Positions 15,368 through 24,155 are shown, counted from the first letter of the stretch. The stretch: 64,000 bases of DNA from Basidiobolus meristosporus CBS 931.73 (GCA_002104905.1 MCFE01000084.1:1-64000), one strand, 5' to 3'. Notes: generated from the sequence alone by a model not told the origin. Numbers and translations are program-made.

Positions 15368-17301
15368 CAGTCTCAGGATTCAAGAATAGACACCAATCAT
15401 CCCCATCGTCCAGATGATGGCTTGGCCTCCATCAATAGATGACCTGAGGAGGTTTCATGGAAGTCGGGATATCTTCCGAGACTATCGTGCGACTCGCATT
15501 ACTCAACCACTCTTAGCGCCGTGGGTTCTAGTTCGATACCCACCGATTATTGGTCCACGGCTCTATTGGTGGCATGGTGCCACCTAACGATCTCCGCAAT
15601 CCTCGAGTTCTTGTGCCTCCGCCGATGATTGAACACAGACGGGATTTGTGCCTGTTGAGATGATATCTTAGACGAATTAACTCAGCTCGACAGTTTATTA
15701 TTCTATCCTTCATGAGGCAGAGTAATGGGAGATATCACGTGCTCGCTGACTTGTTGACCCCTAGCTGGGTCCCACTGAGGTGCAATTCCACTTGCAATCA
15801 AGAGAGTATTGAGCCAAGATCATGGCATATGCCCATATACCTATGGTACTGGAATGGGCTGCACTGTTTAGATACCTGGAGATGGAATAGAGTATCTGGG
15901 TGTAAGTAGGCCTGTTTATTTACAGCTATAGATGAGGCCTGGGTATCAGAGGTGCCAGCAAGGTCGTGGAAGTAAGGGGAGTAGGCTCCGGAAGAGGTTT
16001 GTAGTTATTCATTTTATGAGGATTTTTGAAAACCCAGTAGTGTCAACAATCTCGTTTGCCCATGGTAGCTGTAATGCATATAGCCATTATTACGTGGACT
16101 TTATATATAGCCAGGGCTGTGCAGCAACTTGGTGCTAAACTTAAGGATACCATTTACTGACTCATCGCTAGTTTGTTGTGCAGCGTAGCCAGTGCTCTAA
16201 AAGGTGAAGTGGTATCCCCTCATGCCCATGTTTGGATTGGGATACCCCCCCCAACAATCACATAGAATCTGCCTGCTCTCAGCTTGAACACCACAGACAA
16301 CCTTATCAGGAAGAAAAACCCACCAAAGCCACCAAGAGGCTACCATGAGAGAGCACTGTTGCCACTGGGCAAGGCTGTTCCGTAGCAAAATCCCTCTTCA
16401 CTTCAATGGCAGTTGTGAACTTGATGCCATAGATTTCATGCTAAAAAGGTGGCGCAAAATGCGAACCAAGTAAATATTTGGGAATCCAGGTTTTCCCTTC
16501 CAACCACGCCAGGAATCTCTGAATATTGATGACCATTTAACCGCACGATGAACGTGCACACAACTCCAATATCCTTCTTTCGCATCCAGCACTTCATTAC
16601 GACTAGTCTGGAGCCATCTCAGTCTGCCGAAAGGGAGGCTAGACAACTTCCCAGTTTCACCCGTATATGAGCATAGATAGCTGTGTATATCTGGGATAAG
16701 AGCATGGATCGCTCGTGGAAAGGCCAATGCATATCCAATTCTTACAAGTACACCCGTATACCTCGCTGGATCCCATTTTTCTTTTCGAATTCATTATAAG
16801 TCGTGATGTAGCGGTTTTCGGCTGTTTGTACCCAGGATTGAGGGTAACTTGACGGATGCTGCCCTACACATATACGCTACTCTTTTTAAAGAAAAGCCCA
16901 GCAACCCTCGACCGAAGCTTGCTGAGTCCCACATCCGTAAGTACGTGATACGGAACCCACTGATCAGTGATCCTGGTGCGAAGTTTAGTCAAATCAGAAT
17001 GCCATCGTTGCGGGCCATAGTTTCCTAAAACCTCAATCATGCGACAAACAATCCACCCTTGTTCTATTAATAGAGGATAATGGGCAATTGGAATCTTCCG
17101 TTGAATCCAGAAGTATTTTAGTACGACATCACCCATTAAAATCGCCAAATCATACGTGAGGGATATCAGCATAAAAAGGGTGACTTGAAAAGGCCATCAA
17201 ACAGGTGATATCAATTTCTAATTTCGAGGGCTGGTGTATAGACACACTTCACTCGCTATCTCGACATATCAGTGATAGTTGGAAAAGATTTCTGCATTGT
17301 A

Positions 17302-20300
17302 ATGAATCCCAGTTTGCCCACGAGAGCGAAAGCTTTGTTCCCATATGAGTCGGATGTGTCCGGGGACTTGACTTTTGAAAAGGAGGAAATCATCCAAGTG
17401 CTTGGAAGAGGTGAGTTGGTGCTTAGTGTTTCGGTGCTTGGTATTGTGTTTGTGGATGCAGCCTCCGTGAGAGCCACTCTACCAGATAATGCCGGGTGTG
17501 TGTAGAGTGGGTTGCTAACTTGTGCTCCTTTCGCCAACTCCTAATGTAGAAGATGAAAACTGGTGGAAAGGGAAAATTGGTGCCCGTATTGGAGTATTTC
17601 CAAAGAACTTTGTTGAGCCCCTGTACGTTTTGGCCACGCCTTTTTGCTTTTGTATTGCCTACTTACCCTTCCTTCTAGCCCCGAGGAGCCGGTGGCTGCT
17701 CCCCCTCCTCTACCACCCCGCAAGCCGGAGGAGAGCCCCGTACCACCAAAGCCTGACCTATGGAGAAGTAACACAGTGAACCTCCAGGCGAAGGGAAGAA
17801 ACCTCATGCGAAGTAACACCTTGGCTGCCGACCAATATTCTGCACCTGTCTTAGATCGCGCTTTAAGAGGTAACGAGACTTACCAAAGATACGGCGGAGA
17901 AGAAACTAGCAAAAAGCTGGCTGGGTTTGCTCATTCCAACAGTGACAATATACGTAGATTTAATGAAGAAGCCGGCAATCCCTTATTGAAGAGAAACGCC
18001 ACTTTGAATGAGCGGAATCTCAACCAGGCCAGGTCATTCCTAGACAAGGTGCCGGCGCTGCCCGGTAATGGAGGTGGATCCCCTCCCCCACCTTTACCAC
18101 CAAAGAATGCTTTCTCTGGCCCGGAGCGTACCTTTGGCAGCAGAGATACGCACACTCCAAGCCAACCCCCCCTCCCTAGCTCTGCACAAAGACTGCCATT
18201 AGCAACCCCACCACCCCTACCTTCCAACGGCCGGCCGGGTGGATCCACTTTACCTTCAATTCAAAGGCTGCGACAATCCAAAGGGATCTCGGGCGAATCT
18301 TCAGAGAGCGAGGATTCCAGCACACCTAATCCTGAGTTGGCAACAGCTCCTAGGCCAACACCCAGAGCACGCTATGAGCCCCCTCCACCCATGAGACCTG
18401 GCTCGTCTCCTACTCCAGAACCAGAACCAGTTCCTAGACCCTCATCAAGATCGGCATACCCACCACCACCGGGATTGAGGCCCACATCCGCGACCACACC
18501 TGAGCCTGAGCCGGTTCCTAGACCCTCATCAAGGTCGGCATACCCGCCGCCACCAGTGTTGAGGCCCAACTCTATGTCTTCATCTGAACCAGAGCCAGTT
18601 CCTAGACCATCATCAAGATCGGCATACCCGCCACCACCGGTATTGAGACCCGGTTCTATGTCACCTCCTGAGCCAACACCGGTACCCAGGCCCTCAACAA
18701 GATCTGCATACCCACCACCACCGGTATTGAGGCCAGCATCGACGACCGCATCTGAGCCAGAGCCAGTTCCTAGACCGTCCTCAAGGTCTGCATATCCTCC
18801 GCCTCCAGCACAAAGACCAGCATCTGTGCCTTCACCTGAGCCCGCTCCGGTGTCTAGACCCTCATCAAGATCGGTGTACGATCCGCCCCCGGTATTAAGA
18901 CCCAACTCAACGCCTACACCTGAGCCAACACCTGCTCCGCGAGTGTCATCCAGATCAGTGTACGAGCCCCCAGCGGGCATAAAACCCCCTCCTGCATCTA
19001 CAGCTCGGCCGGCACCAGGCCGTAGTCCCGCATACGACCCTTACCCAGCACCAACAACTACTCATAAATCTACCCAAGAGCCATCTCCCACTCCAAGCTT
19101 TGCATCTTCAGTATCTAGCTCAAGACCGACTCCCAAGCCTGCCTCGGTCAATACACAAAGATCTACCCCAGCAACTACACCAAAAGCTCCGCAAGGAAAT
19201 CCAGCCTCACCCGATCGTGCCTCTCCTGCTCGTTCGGGTACCAGATCTCCATCGCCTACCCTGGATGTCAGCCAAGGTGGGTCTATCATGGATAGAATCA
19301 AAAGACTACAGAACTCCGGCGTACGAGAAACAGAAGGGGAGGTGAATCGCAGCTCCACTCTTCGCCGGTACCCACTGTTCAAAGAAGAAAAGCCCAAACC
19401 TGTAGTGCCCGAGCCGCAACCGGAACCAGCGCCGGAACCAGAACCACAACTAGAGCCGGAATCACTGGCAAATGAGCCTCCTGCAGGAGAAGTTACCTAC
19501 GCGGAGGTCTTGTATGACTTTGTTGGAACGGAAGCCGACGATTTGTCCCTAACAGCTGGTGACAAGATCAGCGTTATCGAAAAATGTAATTGCCCGAGCA
19601 CAGTGAGATTTCCCATTCTCCCTTACCTGTATTAACACGTTACGTACCATTTTTAGTCGACGTGAATTGGTGGTTGGGCGAGCACAACGGAACGCGTGGA
19701 AACTTCCCTTCGAACCATGTCCGAGAGATGTAAGTCGGTTGGGCTGCTGTTGACCATTTCTGCAACCACTCACCCTCGTTCTGCCTGTAGCAAGAGCCCT
19801 GCAAAGCAAGCACCCAGGGGTGCCAATGGCCTGCATAGCGTGGCTGCCGAGATTCAATCGAAATTCCGCCAAGAGAGAGCTACTTCTCCCCCAAGCAAAG
19901 GGTACGTAGCAACCATGCTTCCATGCCAATGGCATTCACCAATCTAACATGTTCTTCTAGTCAGTAGGTCTCCCGCCTGGACAGGAGAAGTGCAGTACTA
20001 ATTCAATCATTCTAATGAAATAGCAGTGGATACGCCCAAGACAGAACATTTGAAGATCCCCTCCAAGCCGCGGGGTGTTACAGCAAGAGCCTTGTTCGAT
20101 TACAACGCGTCGCAAAGCGACGAGATCTCATTCCAGCCTGGGGACCTGATCACCAATGTCTACAAAATCTCCGAAGACTGGTGGTGTGGAACGCACCCGG
20201 TTCATGGAACCGGAACCTTCCCGTTGAATCACGTCGAGATACTGTAAGAGCAATGAGCATTTGGAAATTGATTCCCACTCGCATTCGTCTTACTGAGTGA

Positions 20301-22350
20301 TTTGTTGCAGGTCGAATGGCGATTCCGAGTCCACCACTTCGACGACCAAGCAGCCGGCGCCTATCAACAGCGATCCTGTCCAGTCATCCGAGCCCAAGAA
20401 GGCGGCCCCGATTTCGAGCCCTGCGGCAAACAACGTAGACACTCGGGCCCCTGGCATCCGCGCTCAAGCGATGTATGATTTCACCGGCTCCATGGAGGAC
20501 GAGCTAACCTTCTCGGAAGGTGACATTGTGGTGGATATAGACAAAGAGTCGGCAGACTGGTGGTGTGGGACACACTCGGTGAGCAAACGTCGCGGCCTAT
20601 TCCCCGCCAATCACGTGCAAGAGATGTAAGTTTCACCGGGCATACTTTTCGCAGGGGACGAGCCGAGCATAATGTTAATCTGTACATAGTGGCGAGGAGG
20701 ATGTCCATGATTATTGGGTTCCAGGGTTTCCGCCATGGAAGGATGTCACCGAATCGAGTCACTCAATGCTAGTGTTCGAAGGTAACCATATCCTGAATAA
20801 ACGTGAGAACATCATAGAGACTTACTTAACATGTACTATGCGGAAAAGAGGCGGACTTCGTGGAGGTGGATCGGCACGCTAGGGATACCCCACGTGAGAT
20901 GACCTACTCGATCGGTAGGCTGGCGGACTACCTGGTCAGGCCTTTCGATTCGGAGCTTCTGCGAGTGCGAAGCATATTTGTTTGGATTGCTGATGTGAGT
21001 CAACTGTGTAGACCGTTGTTTGCCTGGACATTGATTCACCAACCTCTCCACCGTGCAGAACATTACCTACGACGTGGAGGGCTTCTTTTCTGGCCGGGTT
21101 TCCAGTCAGGCCGCGGATGATGTTCTGAGATCTAGGCTCTCGGTGTGCGAAGGGTATGCTAGTCTGTTCCAAGCCATGTGCGACCTTACTGGAATCTACG
21201 CGCAGAAGATTCACGGATACAGTCGAGGTAATGATTTGGCTGTCGCGGGCATGTCCTAGTCTATTGGTACTGAGTCTTTTGTTTGTCACCAAGGTGCTGG
21301 CATCAACCCTCTTGTCGAATCCACGTCGCCATTGAGCAGCAATCATGCATGGAATGTTGGTACGTAGGCTAGTGGGAAATGTGCGCCCCGCCTCGGGTCA
21401 GCTAAACTAACGGCACTTGCTTCTAGTGCGCATCCAAGGTGTTTACAGGATGGTCGATAGCACTTGGGGAGCAGGTAAGTCAGCCACTCATCTGGATAGG
21501 GGCTGCTGTACTAAGTGTCGCTTCCCCAGGCCACCTGAAGGGATCGACTTTTTGCAAGGAATTCAATCCGTTCTACTTTATGACACCACCTTCCCTCTTC
21601 ATTGTCAACCATCTACCAATCGACTCTCCACACCAACAGTTCATCTCTCCACCTGCCACGGAAGATGAATTCAGACGCCTGCCATTCGTCTCTCACGCCT
21701 TTATTTCATTGGGCTTAAGGTTCCTCAACTGCCCGCAAAACCTGATGACCATTGATAGGAACACCCCTCTTCCCCTGGAGTTCAATCTGGGGCTCTCCAA
21801 AATATGCCGAATCAAAGCGACCATGAACACTACTCACAGTTGTGCGGAGAATGCCACCACAGTCCAGGTAGACCATTCCAAGAGCACTGCGACCGTTAGT
21901 GCATATCCGCCATCGGTCGGGGAGTGGAAACTCGAGTTCTTCGGACAGTCCGACCTCAGTGTAAACGCGATGCCGGGCCTCTGCACCGTTTATCTCCATG
22001 TCGAGTCGTTGCCATACACTGAGCCCCCATGTTTCTGCACGCAGTATGCCGTGGATCCCCAGTACAACTTCTCCATCCGCGGCCCGTTGTTGCAAAACCT
22101 CCCTCTGCATCAGAGCCAGGACTTTGGAGTGTTCTTGTGGACAGAGAAGCAACACAAACTCCCGAAAGTCGTCCTGATCTCGCCCAGGAACAACTTCCAT
22201 GATCTCCACCCCCAGATAGTGAGCCGCGACCAAGTGGAGTACGTGGCAACCGGTGTCCGGTTGAATGAGCCAGGCTCCTGGCGGGTCGGATATCAGCCGT
22301 TGGGCGCAGGCACTAGCTACCAAGTGATTGCAAGTTACACCTGTCGCTGA
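17302..22350 (+). CDS. Multi-SH3, proline-rich, transglutaminase-like (Cyk3/KY/hillarin-type) protein; ~13 exons, ~1380 aa if a single gene
   Basis: Hand-spliced exons: 17302-17410, 17550-17622, 17679-19585, 19657-19729, 19791-19901, 20024-20243, 20311-20625, 20690-20781, 20849-20994, 21059-21227, 21294-21359, 21427-21474, 21530-22350. Four SH3 domains (ALFPY..DLTF..ENWWKG..GVFPKNFV; VLYDF..DLSL..NWWLG..GNFPSNHV; ALFDY..EISF..DWWCG..GTFPLNHV; AMYDF..ELTF..DWWCG..GLFPANHV). TGase-like core RVRSIFVWIADNITYD..SVCEGYA..NHAWNV..MVDSTWGAG..FYFMTPP..NHLP. All junctions are in phase except 19901/20024, which is off by one base. Confidence 0.82.
18331..19002 (+). repeat. Coding tandem repeat: 8 units of 84 nt (28 aa), consensus PEPEPVPRPSSRSAYPPPPVLRPxSxxx
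   Basis: Equivalent positions recur 84 nt apart (for example 18421 and 18505). The six central units are closest to consensus; the first and last are degenerate. Confidence 0.9.
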
Positions 22351-22934
22351 GAGGCCTCGGGCTCTCTTACCCTGAACCACAGCGGCTACTTTGAAGTATC
22401 TCCGTTGCACATCACCCCAGCCCCCTATTTGACCAGAAGGAACCTAAACCACATCTAGCCACAATAAAGATATCACGTTATTTAGCACCCACATGCTTGG
22501 TATCCAAGCTCTACCAGAGAGTGTGGGCTCTTAGGTTGTCTACGCTCTTTGAAGAGAGAAGGACCTGTCCTAACATGGGATACCGATTTGGCCAGAAGTC
22601 AGGTGGTTTATTGTCTGGAATGTAGCAGTGCTCTAAGTGGCTCATCGATCAGCTCCCGCAATCCATCTGAAGACATTCATGCATGTAACCAGTTTCACCC
22701 AACACTACTTCCAAGTGACCTACTTCATCAGCTTTACACACCTATGTCCTCATTGTCATCATTCCAATCAATGAGCGCAATTCGGTTCCACTGCATGCAG
22801 TCACTTGTTCATGCGATTGAGGGTAACCATCTTCTTAATTTGCCAACGACATTGCGATTCTAGGGGGCCTTCCGGCGATCGAAATACCTCGAAATCCGTA
22901 CCAACCCTACTCTCCTCCACTTCTATCGACCTTT

Positions 22935-24155
22935 ATGTCACTTCCCGACCCCGCCAAACCACCCCTCATCACCTCGGGAGTACTGACTCGTATCTTTAGT
23001 TGCCCACAGTGCGAAGCTGTCTTCACCCACCCCGTCACTCTATCTTGCGGGTACACCCTATGTTTTCACTGCGTGCCTAGCAAATCCGAATTCTACAACC
23101 GCTTCACTTGTCCCATCTCGACGTGCCCTCGCAGAACGCATCCGGCGGGGGACTTGAAGGTAGATGTCCTGGTGTCGAGAGTCGCGGAGAAGGTGGCCTC
23201 TTTGGGCCCGGTCGGCCCTTCCAAGAGCCTCCCTGCCGGGGTTCTGCGCGACCTGTCGGTGGAGGTGGAGTGCCAGATATGTTTCAACCTTTTGTGGCAA
23301 CCCCTCACCACCATATGCGGACATACGTTTTGTAAACTGTGCCTCTTACGTTCACTGGACCACTACGACAGCTGTCCCATCTGCCGTCACCGGCTACCGG
23401 ACTACCAATTCTTTAACAACCACGTGCCGAACCGGACCATCTCCCGTTTCCTGGAGTGCTGCCTGCCGAACGAGTTGGAGACGAGGAGGGCGGCGTTGGA
23501 GACGGAAAAGAACGGGTCTGTCGACGAGGTCCCCTTGTTTATCTGCTCCCTGGTGTTCCCTCGGATGCGTTGCTTCCTACACATCTTCGAGCCGAGGTAC
23601 CGGCTGCTGATCCGGCGCTGTCTGGAGACCGAGAAGAAGCGTTTCGGCATGGTACTGCCCGGAGTGAACGACACCGTCATGATGAGCTACGGAACGATGC
23701 TGGAGGTGAAGTCGTACGAGGTGTTACCCGACGGGCGTTTGCTTATCGAGGCGGTCGGGGTGGATCGGTTTCGAGTGCTTAATTACGAGAATCATGACGG
23801 GTACTTCCAGGGCCGGGTGGAGCTCGTGGAGGACACCGACTCATCCGCCTCCTTCCAGGATTCCCCCGCGCTGCACGAGCTGCTGAGGACGATCAGGGAA
23901 TTTATCGACCACCTAAGGACCGGCTCCGCCCCCTGGCTAAACCAACGGTTGGACTCCACGTACGGTGCCATGCCCACCGATCCCACCGAGTTCTCCTTTT
24001 GGGCGGCCAGCATTCTGCCCATAGACGAGTATCAGAAGTATCACCTCCTGACCCTCACCTCCACCCAAACCCGGCTCTCCACCATCGCCCAACTCACCGC
24101 GCAGTTGAAGGAGCGTTGGTGGTTCTCGTTCGGAGGCTTCTGTAATATTTTGTGA
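22935..24155 (+). CDS. LON peptidase N-terminal domain and RING finger protein (LONRF / Mucor CrgA-like E3 ligase), intronless, 406 aa, C-terminal CaaX
   Basis: RING1 CPQC..PVTLSCGYTLCFHC..CPISTC (His replaced by Tyr). RING2 CQICFNLLWQPLTTICGHTFCKLC..CPICR. LON-N/PUA domain VPLFICSLVFPRMRCFLHIFEPRYRLLIRRCLE..FGMV. The protein ends in CNIL-stop. Confidence 0.92.
   Translation: MSLPDPAKPPLITSGVLTRIFSCPQCEAVFTHPVTLSCGYTLCFHCVPSKSEFYNRFTCPISTCPRRTHPAGDLKVDVLVSRVAEKVASLGPVGPSKSLPAGVLRDLSVEVECQICFNLLWQPLTTICGHTFCKLCLLRSLDHYDSCPICRHRLPDYQFFNNHVPNRTISRFLECCLPNELETRRAALETEKNGSVDEVPLFICSLVFPRMRCFLHIFEPRYRLLIRRCLETEKKRFGMVLPGVNDTVMMSYGTMLEVKSYEVLPDGRLLIEAVGVDRFRVLNYENHDGYFQGRVELVEDTDSSASFQDSPALHELLRTIREFIDHLRTGSAPWLNQRLDSTYGAMPTDPTEFSFWAASILPIDEYQKYHLLTLTSTQTRLSTIAQLTAQLKERWWFSFGGFCNIL

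What the first reader, a model, noticed from the sequence alone, without database searches (positions are those of the whole stretch)
17302..22350. Four-SH3 scaffold fused to a transglutaminase-like domain with an intact catalytic triad
Seen: hand splicing of five small exons missed by the ORF track (20849-21474 into 21530) assembles a Cyk3/KY-type domain with Cys (SVCEGYA, ~21145), His (NHAWN, 21344-46) and Asp (MVDSTW, ~21456). Upstream are four SH3 domains and ~600 aa of proline-rich sequence. Known: yeast Cyk3 cytokinesis proteins have a single N-terminal SH3 and are reported to lack the catalytic Cys, whereas animal KY-type proteins keep the C-H-D triad. Inference: this is an unusual architecture, plausibly an active cysteine protease or transamidase on a multivalent cortical or cytokinetic scaffold. 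I regard it as the best candidate for an undescribed system in the window.
Basis: partly seen in the sequence, partly recalled or inferred. Interest (0 to 1): 0.72.

Follow-up and report, generated by a model that had tools for sequence, protein, structure and literature searches.

The report
Four-SH3 KY-type transglutaminase-like gene
A mis-annotated Basidiobolus gene most likely encodes one ~1,381-residue protein: four SH3 domains and a proline-rich linker carrying a KY/SppB-type transglutaminase-like cysteine enzyme; the enzyme half is an ordinary member of a known family, and only the multi-SH3 front end is unusual.

Summary
Window 17302-22350 (+), from Basidiobolus meristosporus CBS 931.73, can be read as one 13-exon GT-AG gene of 1,381 codons. 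It has four SH3 domains, a ~600-aa linker with 24% proline and six 28-aa repeats, a Transglut_core domain with Cys/His/Asp at the stated codons, and two C-terminal Ig-like domains.

The deposited annotation splits the locus. One model (885 aa) runs out of frame after SH3-2, another covers only 256 aa of the last exon, and the catalytic exons are unannotated.

The interpretation needs correcting. The intact triad is not unusual. It is invariant in the KY/SppB-type relatives compared, including the single-SH3 proteins of Glomeromycota, Umbelopsis and Endogonales. Only the Cyk3-type clade lacks the Cys.

What is rare is the SH3 multiplicity. Of 260 relatives, 26 carry SH3 domains: 25 have one, and only the B. 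ranarum orthologue has three (its model is 5'-truncated).

One weak point remains. The E4-E5-E6 joins stay in frame only if the second AG (19794) is the acceptor, and no RNA run was listed to check this.

Verdict: a real gene and a lineage-specific variant of a known family, not an undescribed system.

The parts
17302..17410 (+). Exon 1: start codon and N-terminal half of SH3-1
   Evidence: ATG at 17302, GTGAGT donor at 17411. SH3_1 profile positions 1-26. Identical to the start of deposited model P0161.
17550..17622 (+). Exon 2: C-terminal half of SH3-1
   Evidence: SH3_9 profile positions 29-49. Phase bookkeeping. SH3-1 matches best the N-terminal SH3 of Glomeromycota SH3-TGc proteins (43-48% identity).
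17679..19585 (+). Exon 3: ~600-aa Pro/Ser-rich linker, then the N-terminal half of SH3-2 (from about 19507)
   Evidence: Open frame of 635 aa. 24% Pro and 14% Ser. Class II motifs PPLPPRK and PPLPPK. SH3_1 profile positions 2-27 at residues 610-635.
18421..18927 (+). Six tandem copies of an 84-nt (28-aa) repeat inside the linker (unit ...EPEPVPRPSSRSAYPPPPVLRP...)
   Evidence: Tandem Repeats Finder: period 84, 6.0 copies, 72% matches. Shown in register.
19657..19729 (+). Exon 4: C-terminal half of SH3-2
   Evidence: SH3_2 profile positions 33-54. 67% identical to B. ranarum P0002 residues 250-273.
19795..19901 (+). Exon 5: short unconserved linker. The start (19795 or 19791) is the uncertain point of the model.
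   Evidence: Starting at 19795 (acceptor CAAG|), the frame runs into exon 6 with no stop. Starting at 19791, as in deposited model P0161, exon 6 is read out of frame. Neither codon usage nor similarity to B. ranarum decides between them.
20024..20243 (+). Exon 6: SH3-3 (domain about 20086-20241)
   Evidence: SH3_1, 47.2 bits. 80% identical to P0002 residues 310-384. No in-frame ATG, and a stop codon lies just upstream of the acceptor.
20311..20625 (+). Exon 7: Ser/Thr/Pro linker and SH3-4 (domain about 20462-20623)
   Evidence: SH3_1, 52.5 bits. 74% identical to P0002 residues 428-485.
20690..20781 (+). Exon 8: Basidiobolus-specific segment (DYWVPGFPPWKDV...) joining SH3-4 to the TGase domain
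   Evidence: 69% identical to P0002 residues 487-515 and collinear with it. The motif is absent from other family members.
20849..20994 (+). Exon 9: N-terminal helices of the transglutaminase-like domain (DFVEVD..ARDTP...IFVWIAD)
   Evidence: 66% identical to P0002 residues 515-564. Family-wide motifs D..ARxTP and R.IF.WI.
21059..21227 (+). Exon 10: core with the catalytic Cys (codon 21146-21148, SVCEGYA)
   Evidence: Transglut_core, 27.1 bits against a cut-off of 23. The Cys column is invariant in 22 KY-type relatives. In the orthologue model it sits at the N-terminus of a helix, pLDDT 94-98.
21294..21359 (+). Exon 11: catalytic His (codon 21344-21346, NHAWN)
   Evidence: Translation. His is invariant.
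21427..21474 (+). Exon 12: catalytic Asp (codon 21456-21458, MVDSTWGAG)
   Evidence: Translation. Asp is invariant.
21530..22350 (+). Exon 13: end of the core, Ig-like_KY domain, a second Ig-like domain related to Ig_CYK3_C, and the stop codon at 22348-22350
   Evidence: Ig-like_KY, 34.5 bits. The last ~115 aa compared with the Cyk3 C-terminal Ig profile: hhalign 95.7%, E 9e-9. AF2 model: pLDDT 81.6, two beta-sandwiches. Best fold match is FAP246, followed by tandem Ig domains.
22463..22468 (+). AATAAA, a possible polyadenylation signal
   Evidence: Read directly in the sequence, 113 nt after the stop codon. Not tested.

Best explanation
The locus is one 13-exon gene of Basidiobolus meristosporus encoding a protein of ~1,381 aa. 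Its back half is a KY/SppB-type transglutaminase-like (papain-like fold) domain with a complete Cys-His-Asp triad, followed by two Ig-like domains. This is the same core plan as the single-SH3 + TGc + Ig proteins of other early-diverging fungi, as vertebrate kyphoscoliosis peptidase, and as Aspergillus SppB.

Its front half is a lineage-specific elaboration. The ancestral N-terminal SH3 (SH3-1) is kept. Between it and the enzyme domain lie a ~600-aa proline-rich linker with repeats and three further SH3 domains.

Inferred mechanism (not shown):
- The SH3 domains, and the PxxP-rich linker as a ligand for other SH3 proteins, tether the protein to cortical actin or to the septum and cytokinesis machinery.
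- There the thiol enzyme cleaves or cross-links a local substrate, as proposed for SppB at the septal pore.

Shown: gene structure, domains, triad residues, family placement and rarity of the architecture. Inferred: catalysis, localisation and partners.
For: Gene model:
- A canonical GT-AG model of 13 exons and 1,381 codons has no internal stop.
- It is collinear with B. ranarum KAK9680547.1 (P0002), which carries 3 SH3 + Transglut_core + Ig-like_KY in one model.
- SH3-3, SH3-4 and exons 8-9 have no usable start codon in either species.
- SH3-1, at the far N-terminus, is most like the N-terminal SH3 of the Glomeromycota SH3-TGc proteins. Both ends of the locus therefore match one ancestral gene.

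Domains and fold:
- The triad motifs VC[AED]GY / HAWN / DSTWG are shared with every KY-type group.
- The orthologue's AF2 core has pLDDT 94-98. Cys starts a helix, and His and Asp sit on adjacent strands.
- Fold matches are FAP246, S. pyogenes TglA, and bacterial TGases and cysteine proteases.

Tree: window + B. ranarum 100/99*, inside a 99/97* clade of early-diverging fungal proteins.

Functional precedent: SppB and AoCyk3 act at the septum, and mutating their triads gave septal-pore plugging defects (PMC10848947).
Against: - No transcript evidence: no RNA run was listed.
- The exon 4/5/6 joins are in frame only if the second AG (19794) is used. The first AG (19790) is the usual choice and the one the depositors used, and it gives a frameshift and a stop at about 20476.
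- B. ranarum shows a similar phase conflict at its strongest donor. It is solved there only by a predicted 16-nt micro-exon.
- The margin by which SH3-1 prefers the family SH3 is small (50.8 against 48.1 bits).
- An intact triad does not prove activity. KY's own activity is poorly characterised (PMC10848947).
Confidence: 0.65

Rival explanations
1. The locus is not one reading frame in this strain. Either it is broken between SH3-2 and SH3-3 (a real frameshift, or a one-base assembly error that hides the true frame), or it yields two products. The first would be an SH3-linker-SH3 protein ending as in the deposited 885-aa model or at the stop at 19945. The second would be a 2xSH3 + TGc + Ig protein of ~630 aa, started from the ATG at 19826, which reads in phase into exon 6.
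For: - The deposited model K493DRAFT_104015 uses 19729|19791 and 19901|20027, and reads SH3-3 and SH3-4 out of frame to a stop.
- With exon 5 starting at 19791, no in-frame path uses only strong splice sites.
- The ATG at 19826 lies in the frame that reaches the strong donor at 19902 in phase 1.
- A ~630-aa product would be the usual size for this family.
Against: - A fully canonical in-frame path exists through the acceptor at 19794.
- B. ranarum has no equivalent ATG, because the other frames of its exon 5 carry stops. Its model is continuous.
- All eight downstream exons are intact and 52-80% identical to B. ranarum.
- SH3-1, not SH3-3, resembles the family's own SH3.
Confidence: 0.2
2. The protein is a non-catalytic scaffold like yeast Cyk3. 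On this reading the transglutaminase-like domain serves only as a binding module (in yeast, for chitin synthase and Rho1), and the retained triad is a structural relic.
For: - The overall plan (N-terminal SH3, core, Ig, Ig_CYK3_C-like domain) is that of Cyk3.
- The tree puts the Basidiobolus pair next to the Cyk3-type clade, though only weakly (83/37).
- Yeast Cyk3 works without the Cys (PMC3386208).
- AoCyk3 made no detectable contribution to in vivo TG activity (PMC10848947).
Against: - The canonical Cys and the DSTWG motif, which every Cyk3-type sequence has lost, are kept here and in all KY-type relatives. That argues for selection on the active site.
- The pair lies outside the 100/100* Cyk3-type clade.
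- SppB, which has the same triad, needs its Cys and His for function (PMC10848947).
Confidence: 0.12

Closest known systems
B. ranarum KAK9680547.1 (P0002; hypothetical protein, partial, 790 aa)
   Same: Orthologue. It is collinear from the linker to the first Ig domain, 45-80% identical per exon. It has three SH3 domains, Transglut_core with the same triad motifs, and Ig-like_KY.
   Different: It is cut at both ends by a 3.7-kb contig, so SH3-1 and the last Ig domain cannot be seen. Its model joins exon 5 to exon 6 through a 16-nt micro-exon.
SH3 + TGc + Ig-like_KY proteins of early-diverging fungi (for example Gigaspora margarita KAF0430097.1, labelled 'cytokinesis protein cyk3'; Rhizophagus, Funneliformis, Umbelopsis, Jimgerdemannia)
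   Same: N-terminal SH3 at residues ~10-75, a KY-type core with VC.GY / HAWN / DSTWG, and two C-terminal Ig-like domains. They share the 99/97* clade. SH3-1 is 43-48% identical to their SH3.
   Different: They have one SH3 and are ~580-650 aa long, with a linker of ~100-150 aa. The window protein has four SH3 domains and a ~600-aa repeat-bearing linker.
SppB of Aspergillus oryzae and vertebrate kyphoscoliosis peptidase (KY)
   Same: The same Transglut_core with a C-H-D triad and the same motifs, followed by a beta-sandwich. For SppB: a disordered N-terminal region, a role at the septal pore, and a triad needed for function (PMC10848947).
   Different: No SH3 domains. The Dikarya SppB-like proteins form a separate clade (100/100*), and vertebrate KY lies outside the fungal group.
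Cyk3 (S. cerevisiae, S. pombe, A. oryzae AoCyk3; Cyk3-type proteins of Mucoromycota, Conidiobolus, Massospora)
   Same: N-terminal SH3, a long linker, a transglutaminase-like domain, and a C-terminal Ig domain homologous to Ig_CYK3_C (hhalign 95.7%). Cyk3 has a septum and cytokinesis role (PMC3386208, PMC10848947).
   Different: Cyk3-type proteins lack the catalytic Cys and the STWG motif (PMC3386208). They form their own 100/100* clade, which excludes the window protein. Pfam's Ig_CYK3_C model does not hit the window exon directly.
Chlamydomonas FAP246 (7n6g, 7sqc) and S. pyogenes TglA (9crn)
   Same: The closest solved folds for the core and for the Ig part (TMq 0.60-0.65; TglA rmsd 3.4 A over 164 columns, 25% identity).
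   Different: FAP246 is a ciliary central-pair protein that lacks the Cys motif. TglA is bacterial. Neither has SH3 domains.

Membership tests
KY/SppB-type transglutaminase-like proteins (Transglut_core + Ig-like_KY) | Transglut_core (PF01841) domain | tested here: met
   Exon 10 alone scores 27.1 bits against a cut-off of 23. Orthologue P0002 scores 44.3 bits. Fold matches to TGases and TG-like cysteine proteases.
KY/SppB-type transglutaminase-like proteins (Transglut_core + Ig-like_KY) | Cys-His-Asp triad in the motifs VC[AED]GY, HAWN and [ILV]DSTWG | tested here: met
   SVCEGYA, NHAWN and MVDSTWGAG at codons 21146, 21344 and 21456. These columns are invariant in 22 relatives. Per-group table.
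KY/SppB-type transglutaminase-like proteins (Transglut_core + Ig-like_KY) | Ig-like_KY (PF23265) domain after the core | tested here: met
   34.5 bits against a cut-off of 27 on exon 13. Beta-sandwich in the AF2 model.
KY/SppB-type transglutaminase-like proteins (Transglut_core + Ig-like_KY) | Placement with SppB or KY in a tree | tested here: inconclusive
   It lies inside a 99/97* clade of early-diverging fungal KY-type proteins, but that clade also contains the Cyk3-type clade. It is not in the Dikarya SppB-like clade or the vertebrate KY clade. No Dikarya Cyk3 sequence could be included.
KY/SppB-type transglutaminase-like proteins (Transglut_core + Ig-like_KY) | Thiol-dependent protease or transamidase activity | not testable with these tools
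   Needs a biochemical assay.
Cyk3 (fungal cytokinesis protein 3) | N-terminal SH3 domain | tested here: met
   SH3-1 at residues 8-62.
Cyk3 (fungal cytokinesis protein 3) | Transglutaminase-like domain that lacks the catalytic Cys | tested here: not met
   The Cys is present. All ten Cyk3-type sequences examined have R, S or E at that column and lack STWG. Yeast data: PMC3386208.
Cyk3 (fungal cytokinesis protein 3) | C-terminal Ig_CYK3_C (PF24584) domain | tested here: inconclusive
   No Pfam hit at E<=1. A profile of the last ~115 aa aligns to the Cyk3-type C-terminal profile at 95.7%, E 9e-9. It is homologous but divergent.
Cyk3 (fungal cytokinesis protein 3) | Membership of the Cyk3-type clade | tested here: not met
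   The Cyk3-type clade (100/100*) excludes the window protein. A sister position has only 83/37 support.
Cyk3 (fungal cytokinesis protein 3) | Role in septum formation or cytokinesis | not testable with these tools
   Needs localisation and deletion experiments in Basidiobolus.

The most novel reading that the evidence does not exclude
The Basidiobolus protein may be a surviving 'active Cyk3'. On this reading it is a catalytically competent transglutaminase-like enzyme brought to the division site or septum by SH3 interactions, standing between the KY/SppB enzymes and the Cys-less Cyk3 scaffolds. Its four SH3 domains and PxxP-repeat linker would make it a multivalent, possibly self-associating, cortical hub. 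If so, it would let one test directly whether the ancestral job of Cyk3 was enzymatic.
Probability: 0.2. Interest if true: 0.6.

Novelty: new variant of a known kind. Interest (0 to 1): 0.38.

Why it matters
Three modest points.

1. The public annotation of B. meristosporus lacks the catalytic exons and mistranslates two SH3 domains. Proteome-based surveys therefore miss this protein. PMC10848947 included Zoopagomycota in its BLAST survey but lists no SppB orthologue from it.

2. It adds to a wider pattern. N-terminal SH3 + triad-bearing TGc + two Ig domains is widespread in early-diverging fungi, and the Cyk3-type clade nests in the same group. The Cys-less yeast Cyk3 is therefore probably a derived state.

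3. A KY-type enzyme placed on a multivalent SH3/PxxP scaffold gives a concrete handle for finding substrates and partners. For KY and SppB themselves these remain poorly known.

Tried and rejected
- **RNA evidence.** No RNA run was listed for 17200-22500, so read laying could not be used.
- **In-frame E5-E6 path with exon 5 starting at 19791.** I enumerated GT/GC-AG paths with up to two micro-exons. Seventy are in frame, but all need weak or GC donors. None is credible, so I rejected them in favour of the 19794 acceptor.
- **Choosing the exon 5 frame.** Codon-usage log-odds gave 2.5 against 3.0 bits. Similarity to the B. ranarum linker gave shuffle p of 0.40 and 0.19. Both were uninformative.
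- **An independent TGase gene starting in exon 8 or 9.** Rejected, because B. ranarum has no Met there.
- **Fetching Dikarya Cyk3 for the tree.** The word-based search from Bifiguratus Cyk3 returned only early-diverging Cyk3-type proteins, so yeast Cyk3 is represented only through the literature.
- **Earlier scan notes.** Nothing at this place, and nothing relevant under 'SH3'.
- **Joined 1,381-aa product.** It was not handed to any search or fold tool. Exons were searched singly by reference. P0161:1-760 stood in for E1-E5 and P0002 for the joined core. Scripts joined exon DNA only to check frame and stops: all 13 exons (nothing of the sequence printed) and the E5-E6 junction variants (about 75 residues of each variant printed).


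Full report
**Origin and existing annotation.** The window is the start of contig MCFE01000084.1 of Basidiobolus meristosporus CBS 931.73 (GCA_002104905.1), and window coordinates equal record coordinates. The depositors place two genes here. One is K493DRAFT_104015 (P0161, 885 aa, 17302-20478). The other is a 256-aa protein (P0001, 21580-22350). Nothing is annotated between them. P0161 reproduces my exons 1-5 exactly. It then reads exons 6 and 7 in the wrong frame, so SH3-3 and SH3-4 become nonsense, and it stops at about 20476.

**Gene model.** Reading the sequence and keeping track of phases gives 13 exons with GT-AG introns of 55-139 nt. The product is 1,381 codons with no internal stop. 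The exons are:
- 17302-17410
- 17550-17622
- 17679-19585
- 19657-19729
- 19795-19901
- 20024-20243
- 20311-20625
- 20690-20781
- 20849-20994
- 21059-21227
- 21294-21359
- 21427-21474
- 21530-22350

The B. ranarum protein KAK9680547.1 (P0002, partial) aligns collinearly to exons 3-13 at 45-80% identity. Its sequence bridges each join of the catalytic exons: HGYSRGAG, HAWNVVRI, TWGAGHL. There are four exons, not five, between 20849 and 21474. One further exon lies at 20690-20781.

**The weak join.** Exon 4 ends in phase 2 and exon 6 needs phase 1.
- With the first acceptor AG (19790, used by the depositors), exon 5 ends in phase 2 at the strong donor at 19902 and the frame is lost.
- With the next AG, four bases on (19794), exon 5 ends in phase 1 and everything stays open.
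- With exon 5 starting at 19791, the in-frame alternatives (micro-exons, GC donors) all need poor sites.
- Codon usage and similarity to the unconserved B. ranarum linker do not tell which frame of exon 5 is coding.
- B. ranarum has an analogous phase conflict at its strongest donor. Its NCBI model solves it with a 16-nt micro-exon flanked by two ordinary introns.
- No RNA run was listed, so this join is inferred, not shown.

Several observations argue against two genes:
- Exons 6-9 have no usable start codon in either species.
- The eight downstream exons are intact and conserved.
- SH3-1, at the extreme N-terminus, is the SH3 that best matches the single N-terminal SH3 of the family's other members. 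It is 43-48% identical to them, against 29-33% to SH3-2 and SH3-4 (SH3-3 dropped out of that comparison). The margin over unrelated SH3 proteins is small.

**Domains.** Searched exon by exon, Pfam finds four SH3 domains. SH3-1 and SH3-2 are each split by a phase-1 intron at the same profile position. Pfam also finds Transglut_core in exon 10 and Ig-like_KY in exon 13. The last ~115 residues have no Pfam hit, but as a profile they align to the C-terminal Ig domain of Cyk3-type proteins (95.7%). An AF2 model of exon 13 (pLDDT 81.6) shows two beta-sandwiches. Its best solved match is Chlamydomonas FAP246, followed by tandem Ig domains. A model of the orthologue's core (pLDDT 94-98 over the core) puts the Cys at the start of a helix and the His and Asp on neighbouring strands. 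It matches TglA, bacterial TGases and cysteine proteases, and more distantly TG3, factor XIII and PNGase. The linker is 24% Pro and 14% Ser. It holds class II SH3-ligand motifs and six copies of a 28-aa repeat.

**Family.** An exhaustive HMMER search with exon 13 found only two proteins below 1e-30 (the window's own protein and B. ranarum) and 277 below 1e-3. The named relatives fall into these groups:
- SH3 + TGc + Ig proteins of Glomeromycota, Umbelopsis and Endogonales;
- KY-type proteins of Mortierellomycota and chytrids;
- vertebrate and mollusc kyphoscoliosis peptidases;
- Pezizomycotina and Agaricomycotina proteins the size of SppB.

Every KY-type group keeps VC[AED]GY, HAWN and DSTWG, and the three catalytic columns are invariant in a 22-row alignment. 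The Cyk3-type proteins (Mucoromycota, Actinomortierella, Conidiobolus, Massospora) carry Ig_CYK3_C and all lack the Cys and STWG. This matches what is reported for yeast Cyk3 (PMC3386208).

In a careful ML tree the window and B. ranarum pair (100/99*) sits in a 99/97* clade of early-diverging fungal proteins. That clade also contains the Cyk3-type clade (100/100*). A sister relation between the two has only 83/37 support. Dikarya SppB-like proteins and vertebrate KY are separate. So the enzyme half is an ordinary KY-type member. Its overall plan (N-terminal SH3, core, two Ig domains) is shared with Cyk3 and is probably ancestral to it.

**What is unusual.** Among 260 core-bearing relatives gathered here, 26 have an SH3 domain. 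Twenty-five have exactly one, and only B. ranarum has three, in a 5'-truncated model. The multi-SH3, long-linker version is thus known only from Basidiobolus.

**Function.** By analogy, the protein is a cortex- or septum-tethered thiol enzyme. SppB accumulates at the septal pore on wounding and needs its Cys and His. AoCyk3 localises to forming septa (PMC10848947). Whether the enzyme is a protease or a transamidase cannot be told from sequence. The SH3 domains keep the usual ligand-binding residues (ALYDY-like motif, WW, FP.N.V), and the linker offers PxxP ligands. Multivalent binding is therefore plausible but untested.

**Verdict.** The finding is real and worth a corrected gene model. It is a lineage-specific variant of a described family rather than a new system.

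Noticed in passing
window 17411-17549 and 19586-19656: SH3-1 and SH3-2 are each interrupted by a phase-1 intron at the same Pfam SH3 profile position (~27/29), whereas SH3-3 and SH3-4 have no intron. This hints at two separate origins for the added SH3 domains.
   Followed up: partly
window 18372-18980 (- strand): The 202-aa Gly-rich antisense ORF is only the reverse complement of the Pro-rich 84-nt repeats. It is not a gene.
   Followed up: yes
L001 1527-1669 (B. ranarum JASJQH010009214.1): The NCBI model joins the linker exon to the SH3-3 exon through a 16-nt micro-exon (1595-1610), flanked by two ~60-nt introns that each have their own branch-site motif. The strongest donor (GTAACC at 1538) would be out of frame.
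   Followed up: partly
P0272 (NCBI, 'MAG: Acidobacteria bacterium', 401 aa): It sits inside the Pezizomycotina SppB-like clade beside Cephalotrichum P0278, with short branches (99*). It is probably a fungal contig binned into a bacterial MAG.
   Followed up: no
P0203, P0244, P0205 (Diversispora, Favolaschia, Entrophospora models): Several relatives are annotated as fusions of the TGase-like domain with unrelated domains (enoyl reductase, ribosomal protein S23, SAICAR synthetase). These are probably merged gene models.
   Followed up: no
window 22935-24155 (+) and up to ~14968: Neighbouring genes: a single-exon 406-aa RING finger + LON substrate-binding protein downstream, and a cytochrome P450 ending ~2.3 kb upstream.
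   Followed up: no
P0294 (Conidiobolus coronatus), P0048 (Massospora cicadina), P0071 and P0224 (Actinomortierella ambigua): Entomophthoralean fungi have Cys-less Cyk3-type proteins, and Actinomortierella has both a Cyk3-type and a KY-type protein. The two lineages are therefore old paralogues. Whether Basidiobolus also has a Cyk3-type gene was not determined.
   Followed up: partly
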